Positions 7,093 through 46,500 are shown, counted from the stretch's first letter. The stretch: DNA of 64,000 nucleotides from Macrostomum lignano (GCA_002269645.1 NIVC01000420.1:554217-618216), one strand, 5' to 3'. Made by a program: numbers and translations. Notes: generated from the sequence alone by a model not told the origin.

Positions 7093-7671
7093 ACTTTATT
7101 CACAACTCAATCCGAACATCGCAGTTCAAACGCAGGTGGAGACACAGCAATACTTAGCGATGCCCTGTGCACGCAAAAAATTAAGGAAGGGTCAAAGCAA
7201 GTCAACAGCCAGTCATTTTTGGGCCATAAATTCTGCTTCCAGACCCTCCGCCTCTCTCTGAAGGGAAAGCAGGCGACCATCAACCAGTCGCCACTCTCAT
7301 CCTCCTTGTTTCCACGATAAACTCGACCACTACCGGTGGTAAAAAAGATGCCTTCCCCTTCCCTGCCCTCGCTAATGGGATAAAGAGGGCAAAAAGAGGG
7401 GAGGAGATTTCCAAGAAAGAAAAAAGCCATCAAAACAGGCCTTCCTTCCCATTTAAGCTGAAAGCGGCTTTGTCTGCACTGCCCGCGTCCCCTCAGCGCG
7501 AATCTCAGACCGCTTCCTGGGCGCCGTTCCGGTCTGGCTTGTTCATTGTTCATCTTCTCTCCGCTTGACAACTGATGCGGGGAGAGGCTCCAGCTTCTCC
7601 CGATTTGTTTCGGTGCATCGGTGCGCAGTTCCTCAACTGCTCACAATAGCCTCTGCTCGAGCGCTAATTGA

Positions 7672-7746
7672 TTTGTCTGTCTGCCTGTCTGTCTTGTCTT
7701 AGACAGACAGACAGACACTATCTGTATTAGGTTCTGTCTGTCTTAG

Positions 7747-34974: not shown

Positions 34975-35401
34975 GGCAGTGCTTATTCCCACGGTACTGT
35001 AGGAATAATTTCTGTCTTATTCCAATGGTACCGTGCGAATAATTTTCTGCCTATCCGCATGGCACACTGATGAGATAGCTGCCCTATCTTCTACATATGC
35101 CGTGCGAATAATTTCTGCTTATCCGCACGGCACACTGAGGAGATAGCTGCCCTATCTTCTACATATGCCGTGTGGGAAGTTTAGTACATACGATTTGAGT
35201 GCAGTATAACAACATAACTTGGCTTGAACATTTGTTCTAAAGAAATAAAGATTTAACGACTTTACTATGAGAAAGAATTTTTTTGTGTAGTAACAAATGA
35301 TTTAAATTGCGTGCCGTGCGGATAAGCAGAAAATTATTCGCACGGTACTGTTGGAATAAGATAGAAATTATTCCTATGGTACCGTGGGGATAAGCACTGC
35401 C
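34975..35401. mobile_element. MITE-like element with GGCAGTGCTTAT TIRs and internal repeats
   Basis: GGCAGTGCTTATTCCCACGGTAC ... GTACCGTGGGGATAAGCACTGCC inverted ends. TSD unclear. Confidence 0.75.
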
Positions 35402-37477
35402 TTTATAAAAATCTTATATCCATATTATACAATTAGATGCGAATACAATCCACTTTGATAATAGCCATTTTGGCATTCTTTCATTTTACAATCCCTGAGC
35501 AGGTCAAGTTTCGTCTTATGATCCCTATTAAAAAAAGAGTTGAAAAGACATTCTAGTTTATCAAAAAAGTATGTTTCACATTCATTTTCCAATTGCAACT
35601 CACTTTCTAGTCAACCTAATTCATCACTGCAACTCACTTTTCAGTCAACTTGAGGATCCTCAGCGTAGCATTAGTTATGAAAGCATGTAGCTTATATTCA
35701 CTTTTGTCATACAATCATTTAAATGGTGAAGTTATATGTAGATGATCACAAGACGAAACCGAAAGAGCTTGTAGGTTTTTAATTACAATCACTGCATTGG
35801 TAGAATTGTATTAGAGAGATCGTATAACAAAAGTGAATGGATTACACATTCATCCCTGGCAAAGTTGCACTAATTCACGGCAGCTTCTCTAATCTCTATT
35901 AACAATCTACAGGGTTCAAGAATGAAATTGTATTCATTATAAGATTCACAAGTGTCATCCCCCCTCACTTTCATCATACGATCCCCCTAGTTTATTGGAC
36001 CTATGTGTTATACCAAGTGGTGATCGTATGACAAAAGTGAGGGGGGGGGGGCATAAGGCGGCGTCGGCGCCCAAAAAGGCTGTGCAAAAAGAGCTGTGTA
36101 AAAAGTGGGTGGCTTTTGGTTTGTGGATATATTAGAGGCTGCAATTGATTGTTTCGTTGAAACGTCTATTATAAGACAATATTTTTTGTTAAAATAACAC
36201 TTAGAAGTGGTCCCATTTTGAAGTTCAATTTTAAGAGCAATTTTCCATTTTCCCTTGGGGGGGGGAACGTATAACAAAAGTCTCGACTCCCATAGGGACA
36301 GTGCTAGGTGATCGTAAAACAAAAGAATGCTGCCATTTTGGTAACAGCCACTTCAGTAACAAAAAATGACCACTTCAATAATAGCCATTTTGGTAATAGC
36401 CACTTTGGTAACAAAGGAGATTTATAACTGTCAACACTTTATTCTTATGATAATTAGGTTTAGCAATAACTAGTTTAATAATTAATATCTAAAATATCTT
36501 ATTGCTATATATGGTTAAAGTTTATAATTCAACTAATTAAACTTGCAGGTTAACTTTGTAAAAATTTAAAGGCAAAGAAAATTAAGTTAAGTATCAAGCA
36601 AGCTTGCATACATTGAAATTAAAGCAAAATTTAAATAATTAATAAAGAAAAAGGTACATTCTGCAATTTTAATTGCTATTCACTAACTAGATCAAAGATT
36701 CTAATGTATCCAATATACAATATTTGGTTAATTATAGGATGTCTTAGGTCCATGTATTTGACTCATTTAGAAATTATATACAATCGCATTTTCTATATAG
36801 ACTAGCATAACCTAAAAATGATTGTAAAACTAAGACTTCTATTTAAAAAACACCAATCAAAGACACAGGCCTGCCCAACCACTAAAGCATGTCTTAGACT
36901 TTTAAAGATAGTGCTTTATTCAATTAAATGAATAAATGGTTTTTTAGGCTAGCAGACTGCGTGGCTAGCCCTAGATGGCATAATTAATGGATTAGTTAGA
37001 TATTGACTGAGTCACTTAGGCTGAGAGCAGATTTAACTTACCATTCAAGAATAATGCCAGTGTTATCTTCTGGTTGGCAACAAAAGCAATGACTGGAATA
37101 CTGATATTATGACTTGCATGGGGACAGTTTTCAATTGTAGCAGCAAAGCCTATTCTGTCCAAAAGCTTGATGAACTGAGTAATAAGTAAAAGCCTGCTTC
37201 TAATTTCTTTAAATGCCTTGCAAAGTAGCAACAATAGCTTCTATGATAGGGTGTAGAATTTAAGCAAGTATATTATCCTTTATAGTAAGGATTTCCTTTG
37301 CAGAATCATGCTTATTATTTATATTTGATACCATAACCACATAATATACTTGTATGACATTACTTTACACTTGTAAAGAAATTAATGCAATGATTTTAAA
37401 GCAGTTTACATGATAAAAAATAAATATTGTTCTCTGCTTCAGATAATGTTGCGCCTTTGAAAGTCAGAAAAACCACA

Positions 37478-39759
37478 ATGTCTTTCAAATTGTTGCCCAA
37501 GTCTACAGAAGAGTTTTCTGATACCAAATTTTGGGAAGGATTTTTTAAGACACGCGGAAGCAAGGCGTTTGAATGGTATTTCTTTGATTTTGTGTTATCA
37601 CGGATTTAAATAAGTGATTAATTATTGATTTAATGCTAATAAAATACTTCTAGGTATGGGGAATACCAGGACATGGTGGAGTTGTGGGCACAGTATGTGA
37701 AAACTGGCGATCGCGTACTCAACATTGGCTGCGGCAATTCCAATCTGGGCGCTGAGTTGCACGACTATCAAAACTGCGAAGTCCTGTGCATTGACACCAG
37801 CTCCACTGTGGTGCAACAGATGTCACGAAAGCACAGTAAACGACCCAAACTATCCTATCGCGTGATGGACGCCGCCAATCTTGAAGGCCTCGATGATGGC
37901 AGCTTTGCCTGCGCTGTAGACAAAGGCACCCTTGATGCTTTGATGTCGGCCGCAGATTCCTCTATTCAAGCTGTTGTTGATGGCATGCTGGCCGAGGCGC
38001 ATCGGGTACTGCGGGTTGGCGGCAGGCATCTCATTGTTAGCCTTTGTCAGAAACAAGTTGTTGATAAACTAGTGCAGCACATCTCTCTGAGGTTTGTGAA
38101 TTTGTCTTATGTTCTTTTTGGAATAAAAATCCCCTTGGAAAGAAATCTTACTAATCATGTGAAAACCTGCCACTCATTCCTTAAAAATCTCATTTGTATC
38201 CCGTGCGAAATCTTAGATTTATCCAGTGAGAAATCTCCCATTTATCCAGTGAGAAATCTCCTATTTCTATACTTATTATCTCCCATAAATTTTGCAGGCC
38301 GTGGATAGCCCGAGTCCACCAGGTCGCATCAACATCGGCCTCGGACTCTTCCGGCTTTCCTTTGCCGGTGTTTTTTATCGCCCTAACCAAACTGCGCCCA
38401 GCAGCAACGGCAACTGCAGTCTCTTCCATAGTGCAGGTGCAGGACGCCTATTCCACTGGACCGCCTGAACGACTTGATTCAGTGGCCAGCCTCACTGATT
38501 GGATTCGGCAAGTTCAACTAACAGCTTATTCCTTGTCTCGATCTTCCGGTATGGAAATCAACAGCACTGATGCTTTCGGCGATGCCGACAGTCAATGCCG
38601 GGTGACTCAGTTCAGTTATTCTTGCGGTCGCACCGGTTTGCCAACTTTCACCTGTCACTTGTTGACGCATGTCGCTACATCGTCTCGTCGACGTACTGGC
38701 TACGCTGTCTTTATTGAACCGTTAGGATCGTCTGCCTGTCGATTGTCGCCTAGCGATCGGCGAGATCTGCTAGAATCGCAGTCTAATTTGCGTCGATTAT
38801 TATTTGTTAAATTGCATCCCTGGCTGCACTACCAGTCGGACACAGCGTTGCAAGCTTCGCTGTCTCGCCTAGTGATGGCATTTGCGCCTAAGCCTGGCAT
38901 GCCAGAGTCTCAGGTGCCTTTCTTAAGCACTGGCCGGCTAGCTTATCCTTATCAGTCAGTTGCTACTCGAGTTGGGTATATTGTTGAACAATCCGAGGAT
39001 GATAGTCAAACTAAAGAGCTCCGATTGCTACGCCCGGAAAGCGACCTGTCGCCGCTGCTTTGCTGCGCCAATGCCGCTCTGGTCAAGTCAGTGTCATCGA
39101 CCGTCTGTTCCGACATTGTTGCTGAAGCTGGCAACAGTCCGTTGGGTCGCCTGCTAGATCAGCTTATTGGTATTAGTAGCGACACCAACCCATGTGCTTT
39201 GATCAATTGGCCTTGCAATCTTGACTGGCTGTTGACGTACAAGCATCGTCAACCTGAGAGGCCGCCTCCGAAGCTGTACGTGTCTGCATCGTCTCCGGCT
39301 GTTAGCCTTCTTGCCGAGTATTTTAACCTCACCTGGACTGCTACTAAGCAGCCGTTTGCATTGGATTCTCGGCACCGTCTAGTGGTTCTGTTTCCTCCTG
39401 CTGACTCTCTGGCATCATATGCTGCAGCTGTGACACCCGAATCTATTGCTAGCCTAGCCAGTGCTATAGAATCGGACGGCTGCTTGCTGCTGGCTACTAG
39501 ACTATTCGATTCTAAGCAACAAGTTTCGAATATTAATGCCGGAGCTGTAGATTCGCTGCGTCAGTGTAGTCAATTTGTTGACGTCATTTGCGCTGCCTTT
39601 TCTGATGAGGATGTCAACGTTGAACAGGTAGAAATTGACGAGTCCGCTGAGCATCGCTGTCGTTGGTGGATTGCCTGCGCTCTGATGTCGATTGAATCGA
39701 AGTCTTTGATTGAAGACTTTCTTGCTGGTTTGCCTGGCTGTCAACTGATTAAAGCTTGA
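37478..39759 (+). CDS. METTL13: eEF1A lysine and N-terminal methyltransferase homolog; exons 37478-37575, 37654-38091, 38298-39759
   Basis: LLPKSTEEF..FWEGFFKTRGSKAFEW|YGEY, VLNIGCGNS, VDKGTLDAL, RVLRVGGR, WIARVHQV, LPVFFIALTKLR and QVPFLS follow METTL13 in order. Both introns are GT-AG, phase 2. Confidence 0.92.
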
Positions 39760-39996
39760 GCTGACTATGATGAGTTACGGCAAAAAGTAGATTTTGTGTT
39801 TTTAGAGAACATTAAAGGTCATTTTGAAGTCAGTTGTAAAATAAAATTATGAAAATTTGATACTCTATGTGAGAAGCATTTGTTGTCATTATTGACCAAC
39901 AGTTCTGCCAATTCTTTTAACAACACGTCGCTTTTTGTGTCTTTTTTCAATTTTTAGCTTCTAGGTTAAAAGTTTGTGTTATTAGGTTAGGCAAAA

Positions 39997-40066
39997 ATGA
40001 TGATATTACTGGTCCGTGTTTCTGAGCCACCCGTATTGCGGTGCTGCTGATAACTACCAGATCTGA
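39997..40066 (+). ncRNA. Box C/D snoRNA, U18/SNORD18-like
   Basis: Box C ATGATGA, then guide TGGTCCGTGTTT followed by D' box CTGA (antisense to the conserved 28S AAACACGGACCA), terminal D box CTGA; 70 nt. Confidence 0.8.
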
Positions 40067-40120
40067 ATGCCTTTGAGGATGCGTCTATTTATATTAGACT
40101 TTATTAGATCCATATACAGC

Positions 40121-40984
40121 AATGATGAGATTTCTGGTCCGTGTTTCTGATTACCCATTCAAGCGGTAATGCTGTTACTTTTTACCAGAACTGAATGCTG
40201 TTTAAATTAGTCTCAAAACCTGAAATAATCAGCAATGATGAGATTTCTGGTCCGTGTTTCTGATTACCCATTCAAGCGGTAATGCTGTTACTTTTTACCA
40301 GAACTGAATGCTGTTTAAATTAGTCTCAAAACCTGAAATAATCAGCAATGATGAGATTTCTGGTCCGTGTTTCTGATTACCCATTCAAGCGGTAATGCTG
40401 TTACTTTTTACCAGAACTGAATGCTGTTTAAATTAGTCTCAAAACCTGAAATAATCAACAATGATGAGATTTCTGGTCCGTGTTTCTGATTACCCATTCA
40501 AGCGGTAATGCTGTTACTTTTTACCAGAACTGAATGCTGTTTAAATTAGTCTCAAAACCTGAAATAATCAACAATGATGAGATTTCTGGTCCGTGTTTCT
40601 GATTACCCATTCAAGCGGTAATGCTGTTACTTTTTACCAGAACTGAATGCTGTTTAAATTAGTCTCAAAACCTGAAATAATCAACAATGATGAGATTTCT
40701 GGTCCGTGTTTCTGATTACCCATTCAAGCGGTAATGCTGTTACTTTTTACCAGAACTGAATGCTGTTTAAATTAGTCTCAAAACCTGAAATAATCAGCAA
40801 TGATGAGATTTCTGGTCCGTGTTTCTGATTGCCTATTCAAGCGGTAATGCTGTTACTTTTTACCAGAACTGAATGCTGTTTAAATTAGTCTCAAAACCTG
40901 AAATAATCAACAATGATGAGATTTCTGGTCCGTGTTTCTGATTGCCTATTCAAGCGGTAATGCTGTAAATTTTACCAGAACTGA
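40121..40984 (+). ncRNA. Tandem array of eight near-identical U18-like C/D snoRNA units (113-bp period)
   Basis: Units start at 40121, 40234, 40347, 40460, 40573, 40686, 40799 and 40912. Each reads ATGATGA-GATTTCTGGTCCGTGTTT-CTGA...ACCAGAA-CTGA. Confidence 0.75.
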
Positions 40985-41077
40985 AATTACTTAGTCTATG
41001 AAGGTTAGGTTTATTGATTAATTAAGGCAGGTGTTTTCATACTGTTACTATCGTTAATTCCAGCTTAAGCTAACAAC

Positions 41078-42717
41078 ATGACCAACACCAAGGGTATTCG
41101 CCGCGGCACGCGGTACATGTTTGCCAGGGATTTCCGACGCCGCGGTGCCCTCCCCCTGTCCACCTACATGCGGGTGTTTAAACGCGGTGATATTGTCGAT
41201 ATTAAAGGCAACGGCAGCATACAGAGAGGTATGCCGTATAAAACCTATCACGGCAAAACTGGCCGCGTGTACAATGTCACACCACACGCTGTTGGTGTGA
41301 TTGTTAATAAGCAGGTAAGTTCGCAAAAAATTTATACAGAATCCTGAATTTTAAAACTCCTGACCACTTGTAGTCACCCTGCAGTGACTGTCAGTCCTGT
41401 CACTTGAGTGACTCACCTGTCATCTGAGTGACTCACCTGTCACTTGAGTGACTCACCTGTCATCTGAGTGACTCACCTGTCATTTGAGTGACACCTGTCA
41501 TTTGAGTGACTCACCTGTCATTTGAGTGACTCCCTGTCATCTGAGTGACTCCCTGTCATCTGAGTGACTCACCTGTCATTTGAGTGACACCTGTCATCTT
41601 AGTGACTCATCTGTCATCTTAGTGACTCATCTGTCATCTGAGTGACTCACCTGTCATCTGAGTGACTCACCTGTCATTTGAGTGACTCACCTGTCATTTG
41701 AGTGACTCACCTGTCATTTGAGTGACTCATCTGTCATTTGAGTGACTCATCTGTCATCTTAGTGACTCACCTGTCATTTGAGTGACTCATCTGTCATCTT
41801 AGTGACTCATCTGTCATTTGAGTGACTCATCTGTCATCTTAGTGACTCACCTGTCATTTGAGTGACACCTGTCATTTGAGTGACTCACCTGTCATTTGAG
41901 TGACTCACCTGTCATTTGAGTGACTCATCTGTCATCTGAGTGACTCATCTGTCATCTTAGTGACTCCCTGTCATCTGAATGACTCACCTGTCATTTGAGT
42001 GACTCATCTGTCATCTGAGTGACTCATCTGTCATCTTAGTGACTCACCTGTCATCTTAGTGACTCACCTGTCATTTGAGTGACACCTGTCATCTGAGTGA
42101 CTCTCCTGTCATCTGAGTGACTCCCTGTCATCTGAGTGACTCCCTGTCATCTGAGTGACTCCCTGTCATCTGAGTGACTCACCTGTCATTTGAGTGACTC
42201 ATCTGTCATTTGAGTGACACCTGTCATCTGAGTGACTCATCTGTCATTTGAGTGACTTATCTGTCATCTTAGTAACTCACCTGTCATTTGAGTGACTCAC
42301 CTGTCATTTGAGTGACACCTGTCATTTGTTTGACTTACTTGTCATTTGAGTGACTCGCCTGTCATCTGAGTGACTCACCTGTTATCTGAGTGACTCACCT
42401 GTCATCTGAGTGACTCACCTGTCATCTGAATGACACATAGCGATCGCCTCACCACCCCACAAATTCACCAGGTGCGCAACCGCGTGATCCCCAAACGGAT
42501 CAACGTCCGCATCGAGCACGTGAATCCCAGCAAGTGCCGACTGGACTTTCTTCGCCGGGTCAAAGAGAACGACATCAAGCGACGCGAGGCCAAAGCCGCT
42601 GGCAAGAAAATCTCCCTGAAGCGTCGGCCGCAGGGTCCGAGGCGCGCCACCATTGTGAAGACTAAGAAGAACAAGCCCCAGCTGCTGGAGCCGCTGCCCT
42701 ACGAGCTGATCGCTTAG
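41078..42717 (+). CDS. RPL21: 60S ribosomal protein L21 (eL21); exons 41078-41314 and 42472-42717, 160 aa
   Basis: [17 protein letters not shown]...[18 protein letters not shown]|[17 protein letters not shown]...EPLPYELIA*; canonical phase-0 intron. Confidence 0.98.
41385..42432. repeat. 20-bp minisatellite (TGAGTGACTCACCTGTCATT) filling the RPL21 intron
   Basis: About 50 units. Confidence 0.97.
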
Positions 42718-42944: not shown

Positions 42945-43512
42945 CTGCAATGTACAGCCTCCCAGATCATCAGTTGCTTGGCTATTGTCACTCCCTGATC
43001 CCCAGTTGCTGGGCCATCCAGCCTCCCAGATCCTCAGTTTCTGGGTCAGCCTCCCAGATCCTCAGTTGTTGGGCCACCAGCCTCCCAGATCCTCAGTTGT
43101 TGGGCCACCAGCCTCCCAGATCCTCAGTTGTTGGACCACCAGCCTCCCAGATCCCCACTTGCTAGGCCAGCCTCCCAGCTCCTCAGTTGCTGGGCCAGCC
43201 TCCCAGATCCTCAGTTGTTGGGCCAGCCTCTCAGATCCTCAGTTGTTGGGCCACCAGCCTCCCAGATCCTCAGTTGTTGGACCACCAGCCTCCCAGATCC
43301 CCACTTGCTAGGCCAGCCTCCCAGCTCCTCAGTTGCTGGGCCAGCCTCCCAGATCCTCAGTTGCTGGGTCAGCCTCCCAGATCCTCAGTTGTTGGGCCAG
43401 CCTCTCAGATCCTCAGTTGTTGGGCCACCAGCCTCCCAGATCCTCAGTTGCTGGGCCAGCCTCCCAGATCCTCAGTTGCTGGGGCAGCCTCCCAGATCTC
43501 CAGTTGCTAGGC
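42945..43512. repeat. Minisatellite (CAGCCTCCCAGATCCTCAGTTGTTGGGCCA variants) between RPL21 and the next gene
   Basis: Directly visible; it explains the overlapping repetitive ORFs. Confidence 0.93.
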
Positions 43513-43583
43513 CATTGTTACCTAGTACTCAGACTCAACTGCGTGTTACCGTCACCATTTCAGCCAATCGGACAACCAACACA

Positions 43584-46500
43584 ATGGCAACCGCTGTGCT
43601 ACCTCCGCCGCCCTCAATGCCGGATCCGAACTCCTCTGGCGGCAGCTTCAGTCCGCTAACTCTGTTCGAATGCACCATGACCAATGCCGGCATGCTGGTG
43701 GACAGTATGCCAGTTAGGGACCTGGTCTCGGCCCTGCGCATCATTGGCACTCTGCACACTCACGTTGTCAACATCATGGACCCTGGCGTGGCCAGCGTGT
43801 GCGACCTGGCCGATCAGTTCAACTCTCACCGAATTAAATGTCCCGCTGCCGCTGCCGAGACCGCCGCCACCTCAGCTGCCGCCGCCGGCGAGGCCGAGCA
43901 GTCGCCAACTGCCAACTCCTCACTAGACGGAGGCGGCAACGCTAAGAAACGCTTGAAACTGGACGATAATTCTATGGCCTCATCGTTAAACGATCAGAAT
44001 TCTACGGATAACAACCAGACACTTAATAACACCGCTTCTGCTGCTGCCAATGTCAAGTCCGAATCTGTTGCCGAATCTGATGATGATTGCTGTATCCTTG
44101 ACGACGGCGGCTTAGGCCTGATTGGTTCCGACTTTTACACCAGCATGCAGCAGCAGCAGCAGCAGCAACATCAGCCTCGCAATCCGCAGATATCCTCAGC
44201 AGCTTCAGCATCTGCCGCTCCACCCTATGGCGGTCCCGTGCAAGATTCGGCAGCTATGAAGCAGATTTTACGCAACACCTACAAAGCTATGCGAGCTGGC
44301 GGTCCGCACCTATACGATTTTAATAGGCCGTGAGAGATTCATCTGTGTATTCTCTTAATTTTCTACTGGGTTTGTTAAATATGACGGATTATACTACTGA
44401 ATTGAGAGTAGCTTAATACTGCATGTGCCTCACAATTTATTAGCTTGAGCTTAAAAATCAACAAATTATACTACTTAATTGATTGTAGTTTAATGGCACA
44501 TGTACGGACTTATTAATGCTTCTCAGTAATCATTACAGCGGTTTAAAAATCTCAGAAGAGACTACACTACTTAACTGAAAGTAGTTTAATAGCACATGCA
44601 CGGACGGAGTTACAGTATTTATGCTTCTCGGGAATCATTTCTACGAGTTTAAAAGTATTATAAGAGATAATACTACTTACTAAAATAAAAGTAGTTTATT
44701 AGCACATGCGCATAGTTTTTCATTCCTAATAATCGCACAATCGTTTTCTCCCTACCCTCACTGCCTTGTCTGCGCCAGCTGGAACGATCCATTGAACCAG
44801 TCCGTGACTGAACGAATTGTCAGCCAAATTGTTGCCACAACGCCTGACATTTCCGTGTCTCCAGACGACTGGCGAAGTGAGTGCAGCTCCATTTTGAATG
44901 TGTATAAAAATTATTGTGTGATTTGTATATATGTAGATATTGAAACATTGGCGCGGTAGCATTTGCAGAGGTTTACAACCCCCAGTTACTGTTTCATTAT
45001 TATTAATAATAGTATTATTATTACTATCCTCATCCTCAAAATGAGAGCCTGATACTCTCTTGACACACTGATGAACCATTAATTGTATGAATTAATTAAC
45101 TAATTAAAGCATTAATTGGCCTGTTAACAATGCATAGTGCCGAGCATTAACAACAATAATAATTCCACTGCAAATTCTAATGACATTTAAGGTCAGTCAG
45201 TCTCTATGCAGTTCTAAAGCCTATTCGCATTTTTGCAGCCCAAATGCTCAGACTATGGGAAGAATAGCATCCAAGGCGCGATGTACAGTTGAAAAAGCTT
45301 AGAGACAGGAAATATTGTCGAGTGAAAAGAGTAAGTTAAGCAGTATGAGGAAATATATATTAATTTAGCCTTAAAAACTACTGCCGTGTGCAAATGATAC
45401 TACTGCCCGCGTGAATCTAAAACTCAGCCAAAAACAACATTAATTTATGCTACCTATTAACTCTACACTGAAACACTTGGACTGTAGAACTGTGCAGTCA
45501 GTTAATCGGGCAGCTAATGAGCAATCCGTCTGGCAGAAATCTTGATTTGAAACGTCAGACCATGAGAAAGTGCGGCAGATTGCGCACCGTAAGACACTTT
45601 TGCTACTTACAGGGGTGGGGAACTCCGGCCCCCCGGGCCCTGTGACACTTAACTCTCTTTCTCTCGCCTCTCCACTCTCCTCTCCTATCCCCTTTTCTCC
45701 TCTCTCTTATCTCTTGTGTCTCTAGTAAAAACGTTTGCCGACCCCTGTGCCACTAGAAGATTCTGTAGCCGTTTGTTATTCCTGCTTTCGCAATCCTCTG
45801 CGAACTGCATTATCGTTGCGCTAATAAAAAGAATCCGAAGCAATGCTTAGTAGTATGTGTTGGGCATGGTGATGTCTCTCTATCTGATAAATTTGCAGGC
45901 AAATGTGCCGTAGCAATATTCACCCCGCTGCATAGGGAGACGGTTGTCAAGCACGAGGATAGGAAGCGGGTTAAACGAAAATATTCCCGAGTTTCCGCTG
46001 TAAGTTGACCTTGATTTCTAAGAAATAAGCCAAACCCTCGCCCTCACCGTTTCCTCTGCGAAAGTCGCCGACATTTGTATACAAAATAAATAAAGCACAA
46101 CTAATTTTGTTTTAAACTGTCAATCCTATCTGTAGTTCGATGCAATTTAACATTTTTTGACAATTCCGCGTCAATGAAAAGCGACGCCGTGTTGAAATAC
46201 GAGGCCAGAAAACGGTCAATGCGTAAATATGCCAGAGTTAGCTCTGTAAGTAGTATATGCTTGGGGGAAATTGTCCACTAACACTTGAACAAGATCTCTG
46301 CAAATTAAAACCACAAGTGCCCGTTAACCACCAAAGTTTCACTGTGTACTTTTTATTGGGTTGGAATGCTTATTTTACTTTAAACACTTGCAATTAATGA
46401 TGTCTAGGCGGTATAGACGAATTTGTGCGCACCGTTTTGGACGAAGAGATGCGCAATATTAAATCGCGCGGTTATAAACGGCGCTATAGCCGTATTACTG

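What the first reader, a model, noticed from the sequence alone, without database searches (positions are those of the whole stretch)
39997..40984. A 'minisatellite' whose unit is a C/D snoRNA: one divergent plus eight amplified U18-like copies upstream of RPL21
Seen: every 113-bp unit holds box C (ATGATGA), the guide TGGTCCGTGTTT directly before a D' CTGA, and a terminal D box CTGA about 73 nt from box C. Known: this guide is the U18/SNORD18 element, antisense to the conserved 28S sequence AAACACGGACCA; vertebrate U18 is hosted in RPL4 introns rather than by RPL21. The units have no convincing splice sites between them, so one-snoRNA-per-intron release cannot apply. They would need endonucleolytic, polycistronic processing, or only terminal copies mature. 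The 5' TTCTGGT and 3' ACCAGAA of each unit are complementary, which could occlude the guide. This looks like the genome's tandem-repeat amplification acting on a functional RNA.
Basis: partly seen in the sequence, partly recalled or inferred. Interest (0 to 1): 0.7.

Follow-up and report, generated by a model that had tools for sequence, protein, structure and literature searches.

The report
Tandem U18 snoRNA genes beside RPL21
The flatworm Macrostomum lignano carries nine head-to-tail copies of the ordinary U18 rRNA-methylation guide RNA gene just upstream of the ribosomal-protein gene RPL21, and sister copies of the locus carry from 4 to more than 50, so this genome's rampant minisatellite expansion has captured a working small RNA gene; whether the copies are expressed is untested.

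Summary
Window 39990-40984 holds one divergent copy and eight near-identical (98%) 113-bp units. Each has box C, the 15-nt U18 guide plus D' (9 exact matches, 0.1 expected) and a terminal box D.

Rfam calls nothing at its gathering score. In E-value mode all nine copies hit SNORD18 best, at 31-34 bits against a cut-off of 41. U18 copies inside RPL4 introns of environmental eukaryotes score 32-77 bits, so the shortfall is not evidence against membership.

The window is Macrostomum lignano contig NIVC01000420.1. Three other versions of the locus in the same assembly carry 4, at least 46 and 52 copies. The large arrays use a different 154-bp unit, so amplification happened at least twice. Tandem repeats make up 32% of the window.

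The divergent copy matches the amplified unit at 28/28 box and guide positions but only 30/50 elsewhere. That indicates long-term selection on snoRNA function.

There are no splice motifs inside the array. One consensus donor lies upstream and one spliced-leader-type acceptor lies 14 nt before the RPL21 ATG. This fits release from an RPL21 5' leader intron or outron, which is inferred, not shown.

Verdict: a new, unusually amplified member of a known snoRNA family, of moderate interest.

The parts
39990..40071 (+). Divergent U18 copy (D0): stem GGCA...TGCC, box C ATGATGA at 39997-40003, guide plus D' at 40009-40025, C'-like TGCTGA, box D at 40063-40066
   Evidence: SNORD18 32.0 bits. 28/28 identical to the amplified unit at boxes and guide, 30/50 elsewhere.
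40117..40200 (+). Amplified U18 copy 2, with an intact 5-bp terminal stem CAGCA/TGCTG
   Evidence: (34.0 bits)
40230..40313 (+). Amplified U18 copy 3, with an intact terminal stem
40343..40426 (+). Amplified U18 copy 4, with an intact terminal stem
40456..40539 (+). Amplified U18 copy 5. Its 5' stem strand is CAACA (A.C mismatch), and the terminal stem is lost in the minimum-free-energy fold
   Evidence: (31.4 bits)
40569..40652 (+). Amplified U18 copy 6 (CAACA variant)
40682..40765 (+). Amplified U18 copy 7 (CAACA variant)
40795..40878 (+). Amplified U18 copy 8: CAGCA stem, internal hairpin variant TTGCC/GGTAA (a G.U pair keeps the pairing)
   Evidence: (32.9 bits)
40908..40984 (+). Last U18 copy 9: CAACA 5' strand and a unique 3' flank AATTAC, so no terminal stem. 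Its second antisense region differs (GTAAATTTTACCAGAA)
   Evidence: (33.8 bits)
39840..39845 (+). AATAAA, the probable poly(A) signal of the upstream methyltransferase gene (coding sequence ends at 39759)
39869..39873 (+). The only consensus cis-splice donor (GTGAG) between the upstream gene and the array; a candidate 5' end of a leader intron
   Evidence: motif from PMC8629364. About 0.5 such motifs are expected by chance in this stretch, so this is weak evidence.
39941..39948 (+). CTTTTTTC polypyrimidine (TOP/TCT-like) stretch; a candidate RPL21 transcription start 49 nt before D0
   Evidence: Read from the sequence; inference only
41058..41063 (+). TTCCAG, the only match to the M. lignano spliced-leader/cis acceptor motif [T/C]TNCAG between the array and the ATG, 14 nt upstream of the RPL21 start codon
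   Evidence: motif from PMC8629364. Kept as TTTCAG in L003 but read as TGCATG in L001/L002.
41078..41314 (+). RPL21 (eL21) coding exon 1, followed by donor GTAAGT
   Evidence: The spliced product equals PAA83430.1 of Macrostomum lignano.
42472..42717 (+). RPL21 coding exon 2, through the stop codon

Best explanation
The array is a cluster of U18-type (SNORD18 orthologue) box C/D snoRNA genes in Macrostomum lignano. Its D' guide would direct fibrillarin to 2'-O-methylate the adenosine in the conserved large-subunit rRNA sequence GAAAC[A]CGGACCA, the site equivalent to human 28S A1326.

An older small tandem set was the substrate: the divergent copy D0 plus about three further copies, as still seen in locus L003. 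Minisatellite-type unequal exchange or replication slippage then expanded it. In the window's haplotype a 113-bp unit (84-nt snoRNA plus 29-nt spacer) grew to eight copies. In another haplotype a 154-bp unit grew to about 50.

The copies lie on the RPL21 strand, between the poly(A) signal of the upstream gene and an acceptor 14 nt before the RPL21 ATG, with no splice sites between them. They are therefore most likely transcribed by RNA polymerase II as part of the RPL21 5' leader. That leader would be a 5'UTR intron or an outron removed by spliced-leader trans-splicing. Each snoRNP would assemble on its own C/D kink-turn, and nucleases would trim away the unprotected spacers.

Copies with an intact terminal stem (D0 and copies 2, 3, 4, 8) should mature best.

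Shown here: sequence anatomy, family resemblance, conservation pattern and copy-number variation. Inferred: transcription route, processing and methylation.
For: Array and guide statistics.

Family resemblance:
- SNORD18 is the best Rfam family for all nine copies, with the guide plus D' (15 nt) matching the family consensus.
- U18 uses a D' guide from fungi to humans (PMC2780460). Human SNORD18 targets 28S A1326 (PMC12288042).
- RPL4-hosted U18 copies in environmental contigs score 31.8-77 bits, several below the cut-off of 41.
- The internal helix next to boxes C and D is family-wide. The mean longest complementary run is 5.43 against 4.80 +/- 0.13 in permutations, reached by 0/1000. It is 7 bp here.

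Selection: D0 and the amplified unit are identical at 28/28 box and guide positions against 30/50 elsewhere (Fisher p = 2.4e-5). Their terminal stems differ in sequence, GGCA/UGCC against CAGCA/UGCUG.

Amplification: the same assembly holds versions of the locus with 4, 9, >=46 and 52 copies and unit lengths of 113 and 154 bp. The flanks are 96-98% identical. Neighbouring minisatellites vary in copy number too (52.8 against 18.1 copies). Tandem repeats are 32% of the window and 15% of the genome (PMC5730564).

Leader-intron or outron route:
- There are zero donor or acceptor motifs in the array, one donor at 39869 and one [T/C]TNCAG acceptor at 41058.
- 30-39% of M. lignano genes are SL trans-spliced at this motif (PMC8629364; PMC5730564).
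- The upstream gene also has CTTCAG just before its annotated start.
- A T5 run inside every amplified copy argues against RNA polymerase III.

Precedent: four U18 copies lie in one RPL4 intron in L052 and three in L037.
Against: - No expression, 5'-end or methylation data could be consulted.
- Rfam's gathering threshold is not reached. Whole-window E-values are only 0.016-0.07 per copy.
- The acceptor TTCCAG is not conserved in L001/L002, which read TGCATG. The donor GTGAG would be expected about 0.5 times by chance and lies only about 25 nt past the neighbour's poly(A) signal.
- Folding z-scores are unremarkable, -0.3 to -1.35.
- Four of the nine window copies, and all 154-bp units, lack a good terminal stem.
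- Within the array the few variant sites fall in the snoRNA body, not the spacer. There is therefore no sign of selection on the recent copies themselves.
Confidence: 0.6

Rival explanations
1. Only the old copy D0, and perhaps one or two neighbours, makes U18. The recently amplified units are neutral minisatellite by-products. They would be snoRNA pseudogenes, either unprocessed or degraded. This overlaps with the best explanation and differs only in how many copies work.
For: - Copies 5-7 carry an A.C mismatch that removes the terminal stem from the predicted fold. Copy 9 and all 154-bp units have no terminal stem.
- Variant sites inside the array fall in the snoRNA body, while the spacer is invariant.
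- Every minisatellite at this locus varies in copy number between haplotypes. Amplification therefore needs no selective explanation.
- In L052, three of the four U18 copies in one RPL4 intron have a mutated guide or D'.
Against: - Boxes C, D' and D and the 13-nt guide are intact in every one of the >100 copies seen.
- Copies 2-4 and 8 have a perfect 5-bp terminal stem, better than D0's 4 bp.
- The copies are too young (98-100% identical) for decay to be informative either way.
Confidence: 0.3
2. Each unit is an independently transcribed RNA polymerase II gene with its own TATA-like promoter in the spacer, as for many snoRNAs of yeast, plants and nematodes. RPL21 would be merely a neighbour.
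For: TTTAAATT (113-bp spacer) and TTTATATT (D0-to-copy-2 spacer) both start 34 nt before box C, which is 29 nt before the first stem base. The 154-bp spacer has TTTAAATT at -48.
Against: - The spacers are 67-73% A+T, so such octamers are likely by chance. No such element lies upstream of D0, and the 154-bp unit has it at a different distance.
- A 29-nt spacer leaves no room for a terminator or 3'-end signal.
- A T5 run inside the RNA excludes RNA polymerase III.
Confidence: 0.1
3. The multi-copy array, or its copy number, is an assembly artefact of a repeat-rich, partly duplicated PacBio assembly.
For: - The 154-bp arrays end at an N-gap (L001) and at a contig end (L002), and are 100% identical over 7-8 kb.
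- The assembly is known to be redundant (PMC5730564).
- L003 is 100% identical to the window for 2,991 bp upstream but 96% identical downstream, which could mean a chimeric join.
Against: - Four separately assembled contigs all show several tandem copies with the same D0-first order.
- The window's array is fully enclosed by unique sequence. It also carries ordered internal variants (G,G,G,A,A,A,G*,A*), which a collapse or over-extension would not create.
- The smallest version still has four copies.
Confidence: 0.05

Closest known systems
SNORD18 / U18 box C/D snoRNA (Rfam RF00093; human SNORD18A-C in RPL4 introns; yeast snR18 in an EFB1 intron, the latter from my own knowledge)
   Same: - Box C, guide UGGUCCGUGUUU directly before D' CUGA, terminal box D and a short terminal stem.
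- The guide plus D' is identical to the family consensus.
- A helix joins the post-box-C segment to the pre-box-D segment.
- Several copies occur per locus.
   Different: - Scores 31-34 bits, below the Rfam cut-off of 41.
- It is about 84 nt long against 71, and the spacer between box C and the guide is 5 nt shorter, so the internal helix overlaps the first four guide bases.
- The neighbour is RPL21, not RPL4.
- Copies are not separated by exons.
Intronic snoRNA gene clusters (several snoRNAs in one intron) of rice and Drosophila, and the environmental RPL4 loci L052 and L037 found here
   Same: Several snoRNA copies lie head to tail, 100-290 bp apart, with no exon between them and on the strand of a ribosomal-protein gene (PMC2780460).
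   Different: - Those clusters have 2-4 diverged copies inside an intron flanked by coding exons.
- Here there are 9 to more than 50 near-identical copies upstream of the start codon.
- Whether this stretch is an intron, an outron or intergenic DNA is unknown.
Mammalian SNORD115/SNORD116 and SNORD113/114 tandem arrays
   Same: Dozens of near-identical C/D snoRNA copies arranged as a tandem repeat (PMC2766290 abstract).
   Different: - The mammalian units are kilobases long, each with its own exon-intron pair. They carry orphan guides and are imprinted (from my own knowledge).
- Here the units are 113-154 bp, lack splice sites and carry a canonical rRNA guide.
Polycistronic or tandemly repeated snoRNA clusters of plants, trypanosomatids and Euglena
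   Same: Closely spaced snoRNAs that must be separated by nucleases rather than by splicing (PMC2780460).
   Different: - Those clusters usually mix different snoRNAs and have their own promoters.
- No RNase III-type extended stem is predicted in the spacers here.

Membership tests
Box C/D snoRNA (class) | Box C (RUGAUGA) near the 5' end and box D (CUGA) near the 3' end | tested here: met
   ATGATGA and a terminal CTGA are present in 9/9 window copies, and in all copies in L001-L003. One L003 copy has GTGATGA, which is still RUGAUGA.
Box C/D snoRNA (class) | A short terminal stem pairing the flanks of boxes C and D | tested here: inconclusive
   Present in D0 (GGCA/UGCC) and copies 2, 3, 4, 8 (CAGCA/UGCUG). 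Weakened in copies 5-7 (CAACA). Absent in copy 9 and in the 154-bp units.
Box C/D snoRNA (class) | An antisense element of at least 10 nt ending next to D or D', complementary to a known methylated rRNA site | tested here: inconclusive
   The guide is identical to the SNORD18 consensus, whose target is human 28S A1326.
Box C/D snoRNA (class) | A stable ~70-90-nt RNA bound by fibrillarin, Nop56, Nop58 and Snu13 | not testable with these tools
   No RNA or protein data were available.
SNORD18 / U18 (RF00093) | Covariance-model score at or above Rfam's gathering score (41 bits) | tested here: not met
   No hits at gathering; the copies score 31.4-34.0 bits. This is an operational cut-off, not a biological one. 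U18 copies inside RPL4 introns of other eukaryotes score 31.8-40.6 bits in L031, L037, L052 and L083.
SNORD18 / U18 (RF00093) | Guide UGGUCCGUGUUU placed before the internal D' box, not before box D | tested here: met
   9/9 copies. The D' position matches U18 of Neurospora, yeasts, Arabidopsis and human (PMC2780460).
SNORD18 / U18 (RF00093) | An internal helix between the segment after box C and the segment before box D | tested here: met
   7 bp in the amplified copies and 5 bp in D0. The helix is family-wide in 53 unique environmental U18 sequences.
SNORD18 / U18 (RF00093) | Hosted in an RPL4 intron (typical of animals, not defining) | tested here: not met
   The neighbour is RPL21. RPL4 was found next to U18 in 12 of 120 environmental loci and RPL21 in none.
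Intronic snoRNA gene cluster | Several snoRNAs with no exon or splice site between them | tested here: met
   No GT[AG]AG and no [TC]TNCAG in 39997-40984.
Intronic snoRNA gene cluster | The cluster lies inside a spliced intron of a host gene | tested here: inconclusive
   One donor motif (39869) and one acceptor motif (41058) bracket the array. The acceptor is not kept in L001/L002, and no transcript data were available.
Minisatellite (tandem repeat with unstable copy number) | Head-to-tail units of tens to hundreds of bp with copy-number differences between alleles or paralogues | tested here: met
   Period 113, 98% identity. Versions of the locus in one assembly carry 4, 9, >=46 and 52 copies.

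The most novel reading that the evidence does not exclude
RPL21 is spliced-leader trans-spliced at TTCCAG (41058-41063). Under this reading the whole U18 array lies in its outron, or in the intercistronic stretch of a methyltransferase-RPL21 operon. The snoRNAs would then mature from the discarded by-product of trans-splicing, a biogenesis route for snoRNAs not described in animals as far as my searches show. Repeat expansion of that outron would set U18 dosage, with copy number differing more than ten-fold between subgenomes or alleles.
Probability: 0.25. Interest if true: 0.6.

Novelty: new member of a known kind. Interest (0 to 1): 0.4.

Why it matters
- It gives the first concrete snoRNA gene model for Macrostomum lignano. 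A full-text search found no paper describing snoRNAs of this species.
- It shows that Rfam's SNORD18 cut-off misses real U18 genes outside vertebrates.
- It offers a natural experiment. The same functional guide RNA sits in arrays of 4, 9 and about 50 copies in one neopolyploid animal that can be made transgenic. One can therefore ask directly whether snoRNA output and rRNA methylation scale with gene copy number. One can also ask how closely packed snoRNAs without intervening exons are released, and whether an outron can serve as a snoRNA precursor.
- The family and the general layout are otherwise ordinary.

Tried and rejected
- Rfam at gathering threshold on the whole window: no hits.
- tRNA scan: none found.
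It worked through cluster members.
- U18 near RPL21 in Schistosoma mansoni, Mercenaria mercenaria and Dimorphilus gyrociliatus: none within +/-10 kb.
- Exact Macrostomum-type unit in metagenome contigs: none.
- Supplementary files of the genome paper searched for the gene ids, RPL21 and snoRNA: nothing held. RPL21's trans-splicing status therefore could not be read.
- RNase III-type long stems in the spacers: not predicted. Dimer folds have z-scores of -0.6 and 0.05.
- RNA polymerase III transcription: rejected because of the T5 run inside each amplified copy.
- A second guide function for the conserved UACCAGA before box D was considered. It is only 7 conserved nt with no rRNA at hand to search, and it is better explained as the 3' strand of the family-wide internal helix.
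- One snoRNA per mini-intron in the 154-bp unit (AG|GTAGGT and AG|GTAAAT in its spacer) was noted as possible by eye. The acceptors are weak and the exons would be about 15-28 nt. I did not pursue it.
- Sub-threshold mir-214 and mir-4433 hits lie in or beside repeats (7664-7730 next to the TCTG array, 35070-35160 in a 68-bp repeat, 35957-36048 on both strands). I treated them as spurious.

Full report
**Observation**

The stretch 39990-40984 contains one divergent and eight near-identical head-to-tail units. Tandem Repeats Finder reports 40120-40985 with period 113, 7.7 copies, 98% matches and no indels.

The 15-mer GGTCCGTGTTTCTGA (guide plus D') occurs nine times in the 64-kb window, all on the + strand. 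Shuffles give 0.10 expected, and 0/100 reach nine.

Read from the sequence, each amplified unit has these parts in order:
- 5' stem strand CAGCA (copies 2-4 and 8) or CAACA (copies 5-7 and 9)
- box C ATGATGA
- GATTT
- guide CTGGTCCGTGTTT
- D' CTGA
- a 19-nt segment that can form the hairpin TTACC...GGTAA
- a degenerate C' TGCTGT
- TACTTTTTACCAGAA
- box D CTGA
- 3' stem strand ATGCTG
- a 29-nt A+T-rich spacer

**Where it is**

Splicing the two coding exons (41078-41314 and 42472-42717) gives a 160-aa eL21. It is identical to Macrostomum lignano PAA83430.1. The window is contig NIVC01000420.1 of assembly GCA_002269645.1.

Upstream on the same strand is a 676-aa class I methyltransferase gene that ends at 39759. 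Pfam finds methyltransferase domains. By my reading of the N-terminal FEWY motif it is METTL13-like. An AATAAA lies at 39840. The array fills most of the 1,319 bp between that gene's stop codon and the RPL21 ATG.

**Is it U18?**

Rfam finds nothing in the window at gathering thresholds. In E-value mode, all nine copies hit SNORD18 (RF00093) as the best family, at 31.4-34.0 bits against a cut-off of 41. E-values are 3.5e-4 to 1.5e-3 for the 1.4-kb search and 0.016-0.07 for the whole window. The next families score 23 bits or less.

The alignment shows box C and the 15-nt guide plus D' matching the consensus. It also shows a 5-nt deletion between box C and the guide, and a longer 3' half.

To judge the shortfall, I collected 120 environmental eukaryotic contigs carrying TGATGA-N4-24-GGTCCGTGTTTCTGA. 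I then ran Rfam on the 12 that also encode RPL4. Their U18 copies score 31.8-77 bits. Several copies inside RPL4 introns are below 41: L083 at 34.4 and 34.5, L031 at 31.8-35.4, L052 at 33.5-40.6, and L037 at 39. The cut-off is therefore too strict for non-vertebrate U18, and failing it is weak evidence against membership.

The position of the guide before D' matches U18 of Neurospora, yeasts, Arabidopsis and human (PMC2780460). Human SNORD18 targets 28S A1326 (PMC12288042). By the fifth-nucleotide rule (established knowledge), the guide here selects the A in GAAAC[A]CGGACCA.

**The 'guide-occluding' helix**

RNAfold puts TTCTGGT/ACCAGAA into the minimum-free-energy structure of every copy. I tested 53 unique environmental U18 sequences with a terminal stem of at least 4 bp. 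I compared the segment from box C to the fourth guide base with the 12 nt before box D. The mean longest complementary run is 5.43, against 4.80 +/- 0.13 when partners are permuted between loci. None of 1000 permutations reaches the observed value.

The sequences differ between lineages, for example CCACTTC/GTGGAAG, CTTCA/GAAG, TTGG/CCAA and ACAATTG/GATTGT. The helix is therefore a trait of the family, not an oddity of this array. Here it is simply long (7 bp) and shifted into the first four guide bases, because the spacer between box C and the guide is short. The permutation test ignores relatedness among contigs and is approximate.

**Evidence of function over time**

In a feature-anchored comparison, the old copy D0 and the amplified unit are identical at 28/28 positions of boxes C, D' and D and the 13-nt guide. 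They match at only 30/50 other positions (Fisher p = 2.4e-5).

Their terminal stems differ in sequence but both pair: GGCA/UGCC against CAGCA/UGCUG. The hairpin between D' and C' is kept as TTACC/GGTAA, as TTGCC/GGTAA (with a G.U pair), and as CACC/GGTG in D0.

This is the pattern expected if both lineages of copies have been working snoRNA genes. Folding z-scores are unremarkable (-0.3 to -1.35). That is usual for this loosely structured class (my own knowledge).

**Amplification**

The same assembly holds three more versions of the locus.
- L003 (NIVC01002369.1) has four copies: D0 plus three, spaced 125, 113 and 115 bp.
- L002 (NIVC01001318.1) starts inside D0. It then has one 113-type copy followed by 50 copies spaced 154 bp, which are 100% identical.
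- L001 (NIVC01001317.1) has 46 such copies, ending at an N-gap.

The 154-bp unit contains the same snoRNA with a different, longer spacer and the 5' flank AATCA. Two different repeat units were therefore expanded independently from a small ancestral tandem set.

Unique flanks are 96-98% identical between versions. This fits the duplicated, neopolyploid genome described for this species (PMC5730564; PMC10733133, abstract).

The neighbouring minisatellites also differ in copy number. The 20-bp repeat in RPL21 intron 1 has 52.8 copies here against 18.1, and the 28-bp repeat downstream has 19.1 against 11.9. Thirty-one arrays cover 32% of the window. The snoRNA array therefore behaves like any other minisatellite in this genome, and no selection for dosage needs to be invoked.

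The exact numbers in L001 and L002 are lower bounds or uncertain, because those arrays touch a gap and a contig end.

**How the copies could be expressed**

Inside the array there is no match to the M. lignano donor motif GT[G/A]AG or the acceptor motif [T/C]TNCAG (PMC8629364). There is one donor at 39869, about 25 nt after the neighbour's AATAAA. There is one acceptor, TTCCAG, at 41058-41063, 14 nt before the RPL21 ATG.

That acceptor motif is the one enriched at spliced-leader trans-splice sites. [quoted passage not shown] Repeats are known to inflate operon spacers. The upstream methyltransferase gene likewise has CTTCAG just before its annotated start.

The acceptor is TTTCAG in L003 but TGCATG in L001/L002. 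In L001/L002 only a CTTAAG|C seven bases downstream remains.

A polypyrimidine CTTTTTTC at 39941 could be a TOP-type start. A T5 run inside each amplified snoRNA speaks against RNA polymerase III.

Taken together, the most economical reading is that the array is part of a polymerase II precursor of RPL21 and is removed as a leader intron or outron. snoRNPs would protect each unit while nucleases remove the spacers. No extended spacer stems of the RNase III-substrate type are predicted.

All of this is inference. I could not reach any transcript data.

**Comparison with other loci**

No U18 guide lies within 10 kb of RPL21 in Schistosoma mansoni, Mercenaria mercenaria or Dimorphilus gyrociliatus. 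None of the 120 environmental U18 contigs encodes RPL21, while 12 encode RPL4. The RPL21 linkage therefore looks lineage-specific.

Multi-copy U18 without intervening exons does have precedents.
- L052 has four U18-like copies, 103-290 bp apart, in one RPL4 intron. Three of them have a mutated guide or D'.
- L037 has three copies spaced 123 and 153 bp before an RPL4 exon.
- L089 and L008 have tandem pairs.
- Among the 120 loci, 105 have one copy, 10 have two and 5 have three.

'Intronic gene clusters' are described for rice and Drosophila (PMC2780460).

**Verdict**

This is a real U18-type snoRNA gene cluster, not previously described for this species as far as full-text searching shows. It is remarkable mainly for minisatellite-scale, haplotype-variable amplification and for its position in front of RPL21. 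The family, the guide and the general idea of clustered snoRNAs are all known.

The open and more interesting question is whether an outron or operon spacer serves as the precursor. Existing M. lignano SL-read and RAMPAGE data should settle it.

Noticed in passing
window 1-64000: Thirty-one separate tandem-repeat arrays (periods 2-164 bp, up to about 2.5 kb long) cover 32% of the window. This is well above the 15% reported for the whole genome.
   Followed up: partly
window 41396-42434 (RPL21 intron 1); L001 10325-10678: A 20-bp minisatellite (CCTGTCATTTGAGTGACTCA) fills most of RPL21's only coding-region intron. It has 52.8 copies here and 18.1 in the L001/L002 version of the gene.
   Followed up: partly
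window 42955-43514: A 28-bp repeat (19 copies) lies just downstream of RPL21. Because 28 is not a multiple of 3, it yields long open reading frames in all three + frames (PPRSSVAGPASQILSCW-type peptides). It runs into the 401-aa ORF 43128-44333, which overlaps the next annotated gene. Whether the repeat is coding is unclear.
   Followed up: no
L003 6422-9412 compared with window 37000-39990: The 2,991 bp upstream of the array are 100% identical between L003 and the window, while sequence downstream of the array is only about 96% identical. This suggests recombination or gene conversion with a breakpoint in the array, or a chimeric assembly join.
   Followed up: partly
L003 10001-10030: The RPL21 copy in L003 lacks one base in codon 4 (ACCAACACAAGG against ACCAACACCAAGG) and is annotated as a partial 138-aa protein. 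It is either an uncorrected long-read indel or a decaying paralogue.
   Followed up: no
window 37430-37480: The annotated start of the upstream methyltransferase gene (37445) is preceded by CTTCAG, a spliced-leader acceptor motif, and is followed within five codons by a stop. The conserved N-terminus (MSFKLLPKSTEEF...) starts at the ATG at 37478. The deposited gene start is therefore probably the trans-splice site, not the start codon.
   Followed up: no
L052 950-1760 (environmental contig Ga0209617_10022903): A single RPL4 intron of an A+T-rich eukaryote holds four U18-like copies. Only one has an intact guide plus D'. The others read GTTGCTGA, GTTACTGA and GTTTATGA. This is a small natural example of U18 duplication and decay within one intron.
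   Followed up: partly
L002 330-400 (154-bp unit spacer): The 154-bp spacer contains AAAG|GTAGGT and GTAG|GTAAAT donor-like sites and weak AG acceptors. In principle each unit of the large arrays could therefore be a mini exon-intron pair. The 113-bp unit of the window has nothing comparable.
   Followed up: no
window 7664-7730, 35070-35160 and 35957-36048: Sub-threshold Rfam microRNA hits (mir-214 at 24-31 bits against a cut-off of 66.7; mir-4433 at 27-30 bits against 77). They lie on both strands, in or beside repeats (next to the TCTG array, inside a 68-bp repeat) or as a both-strand match at 35957-36048. They are most likely spurious hairpins.
   Followed up: no
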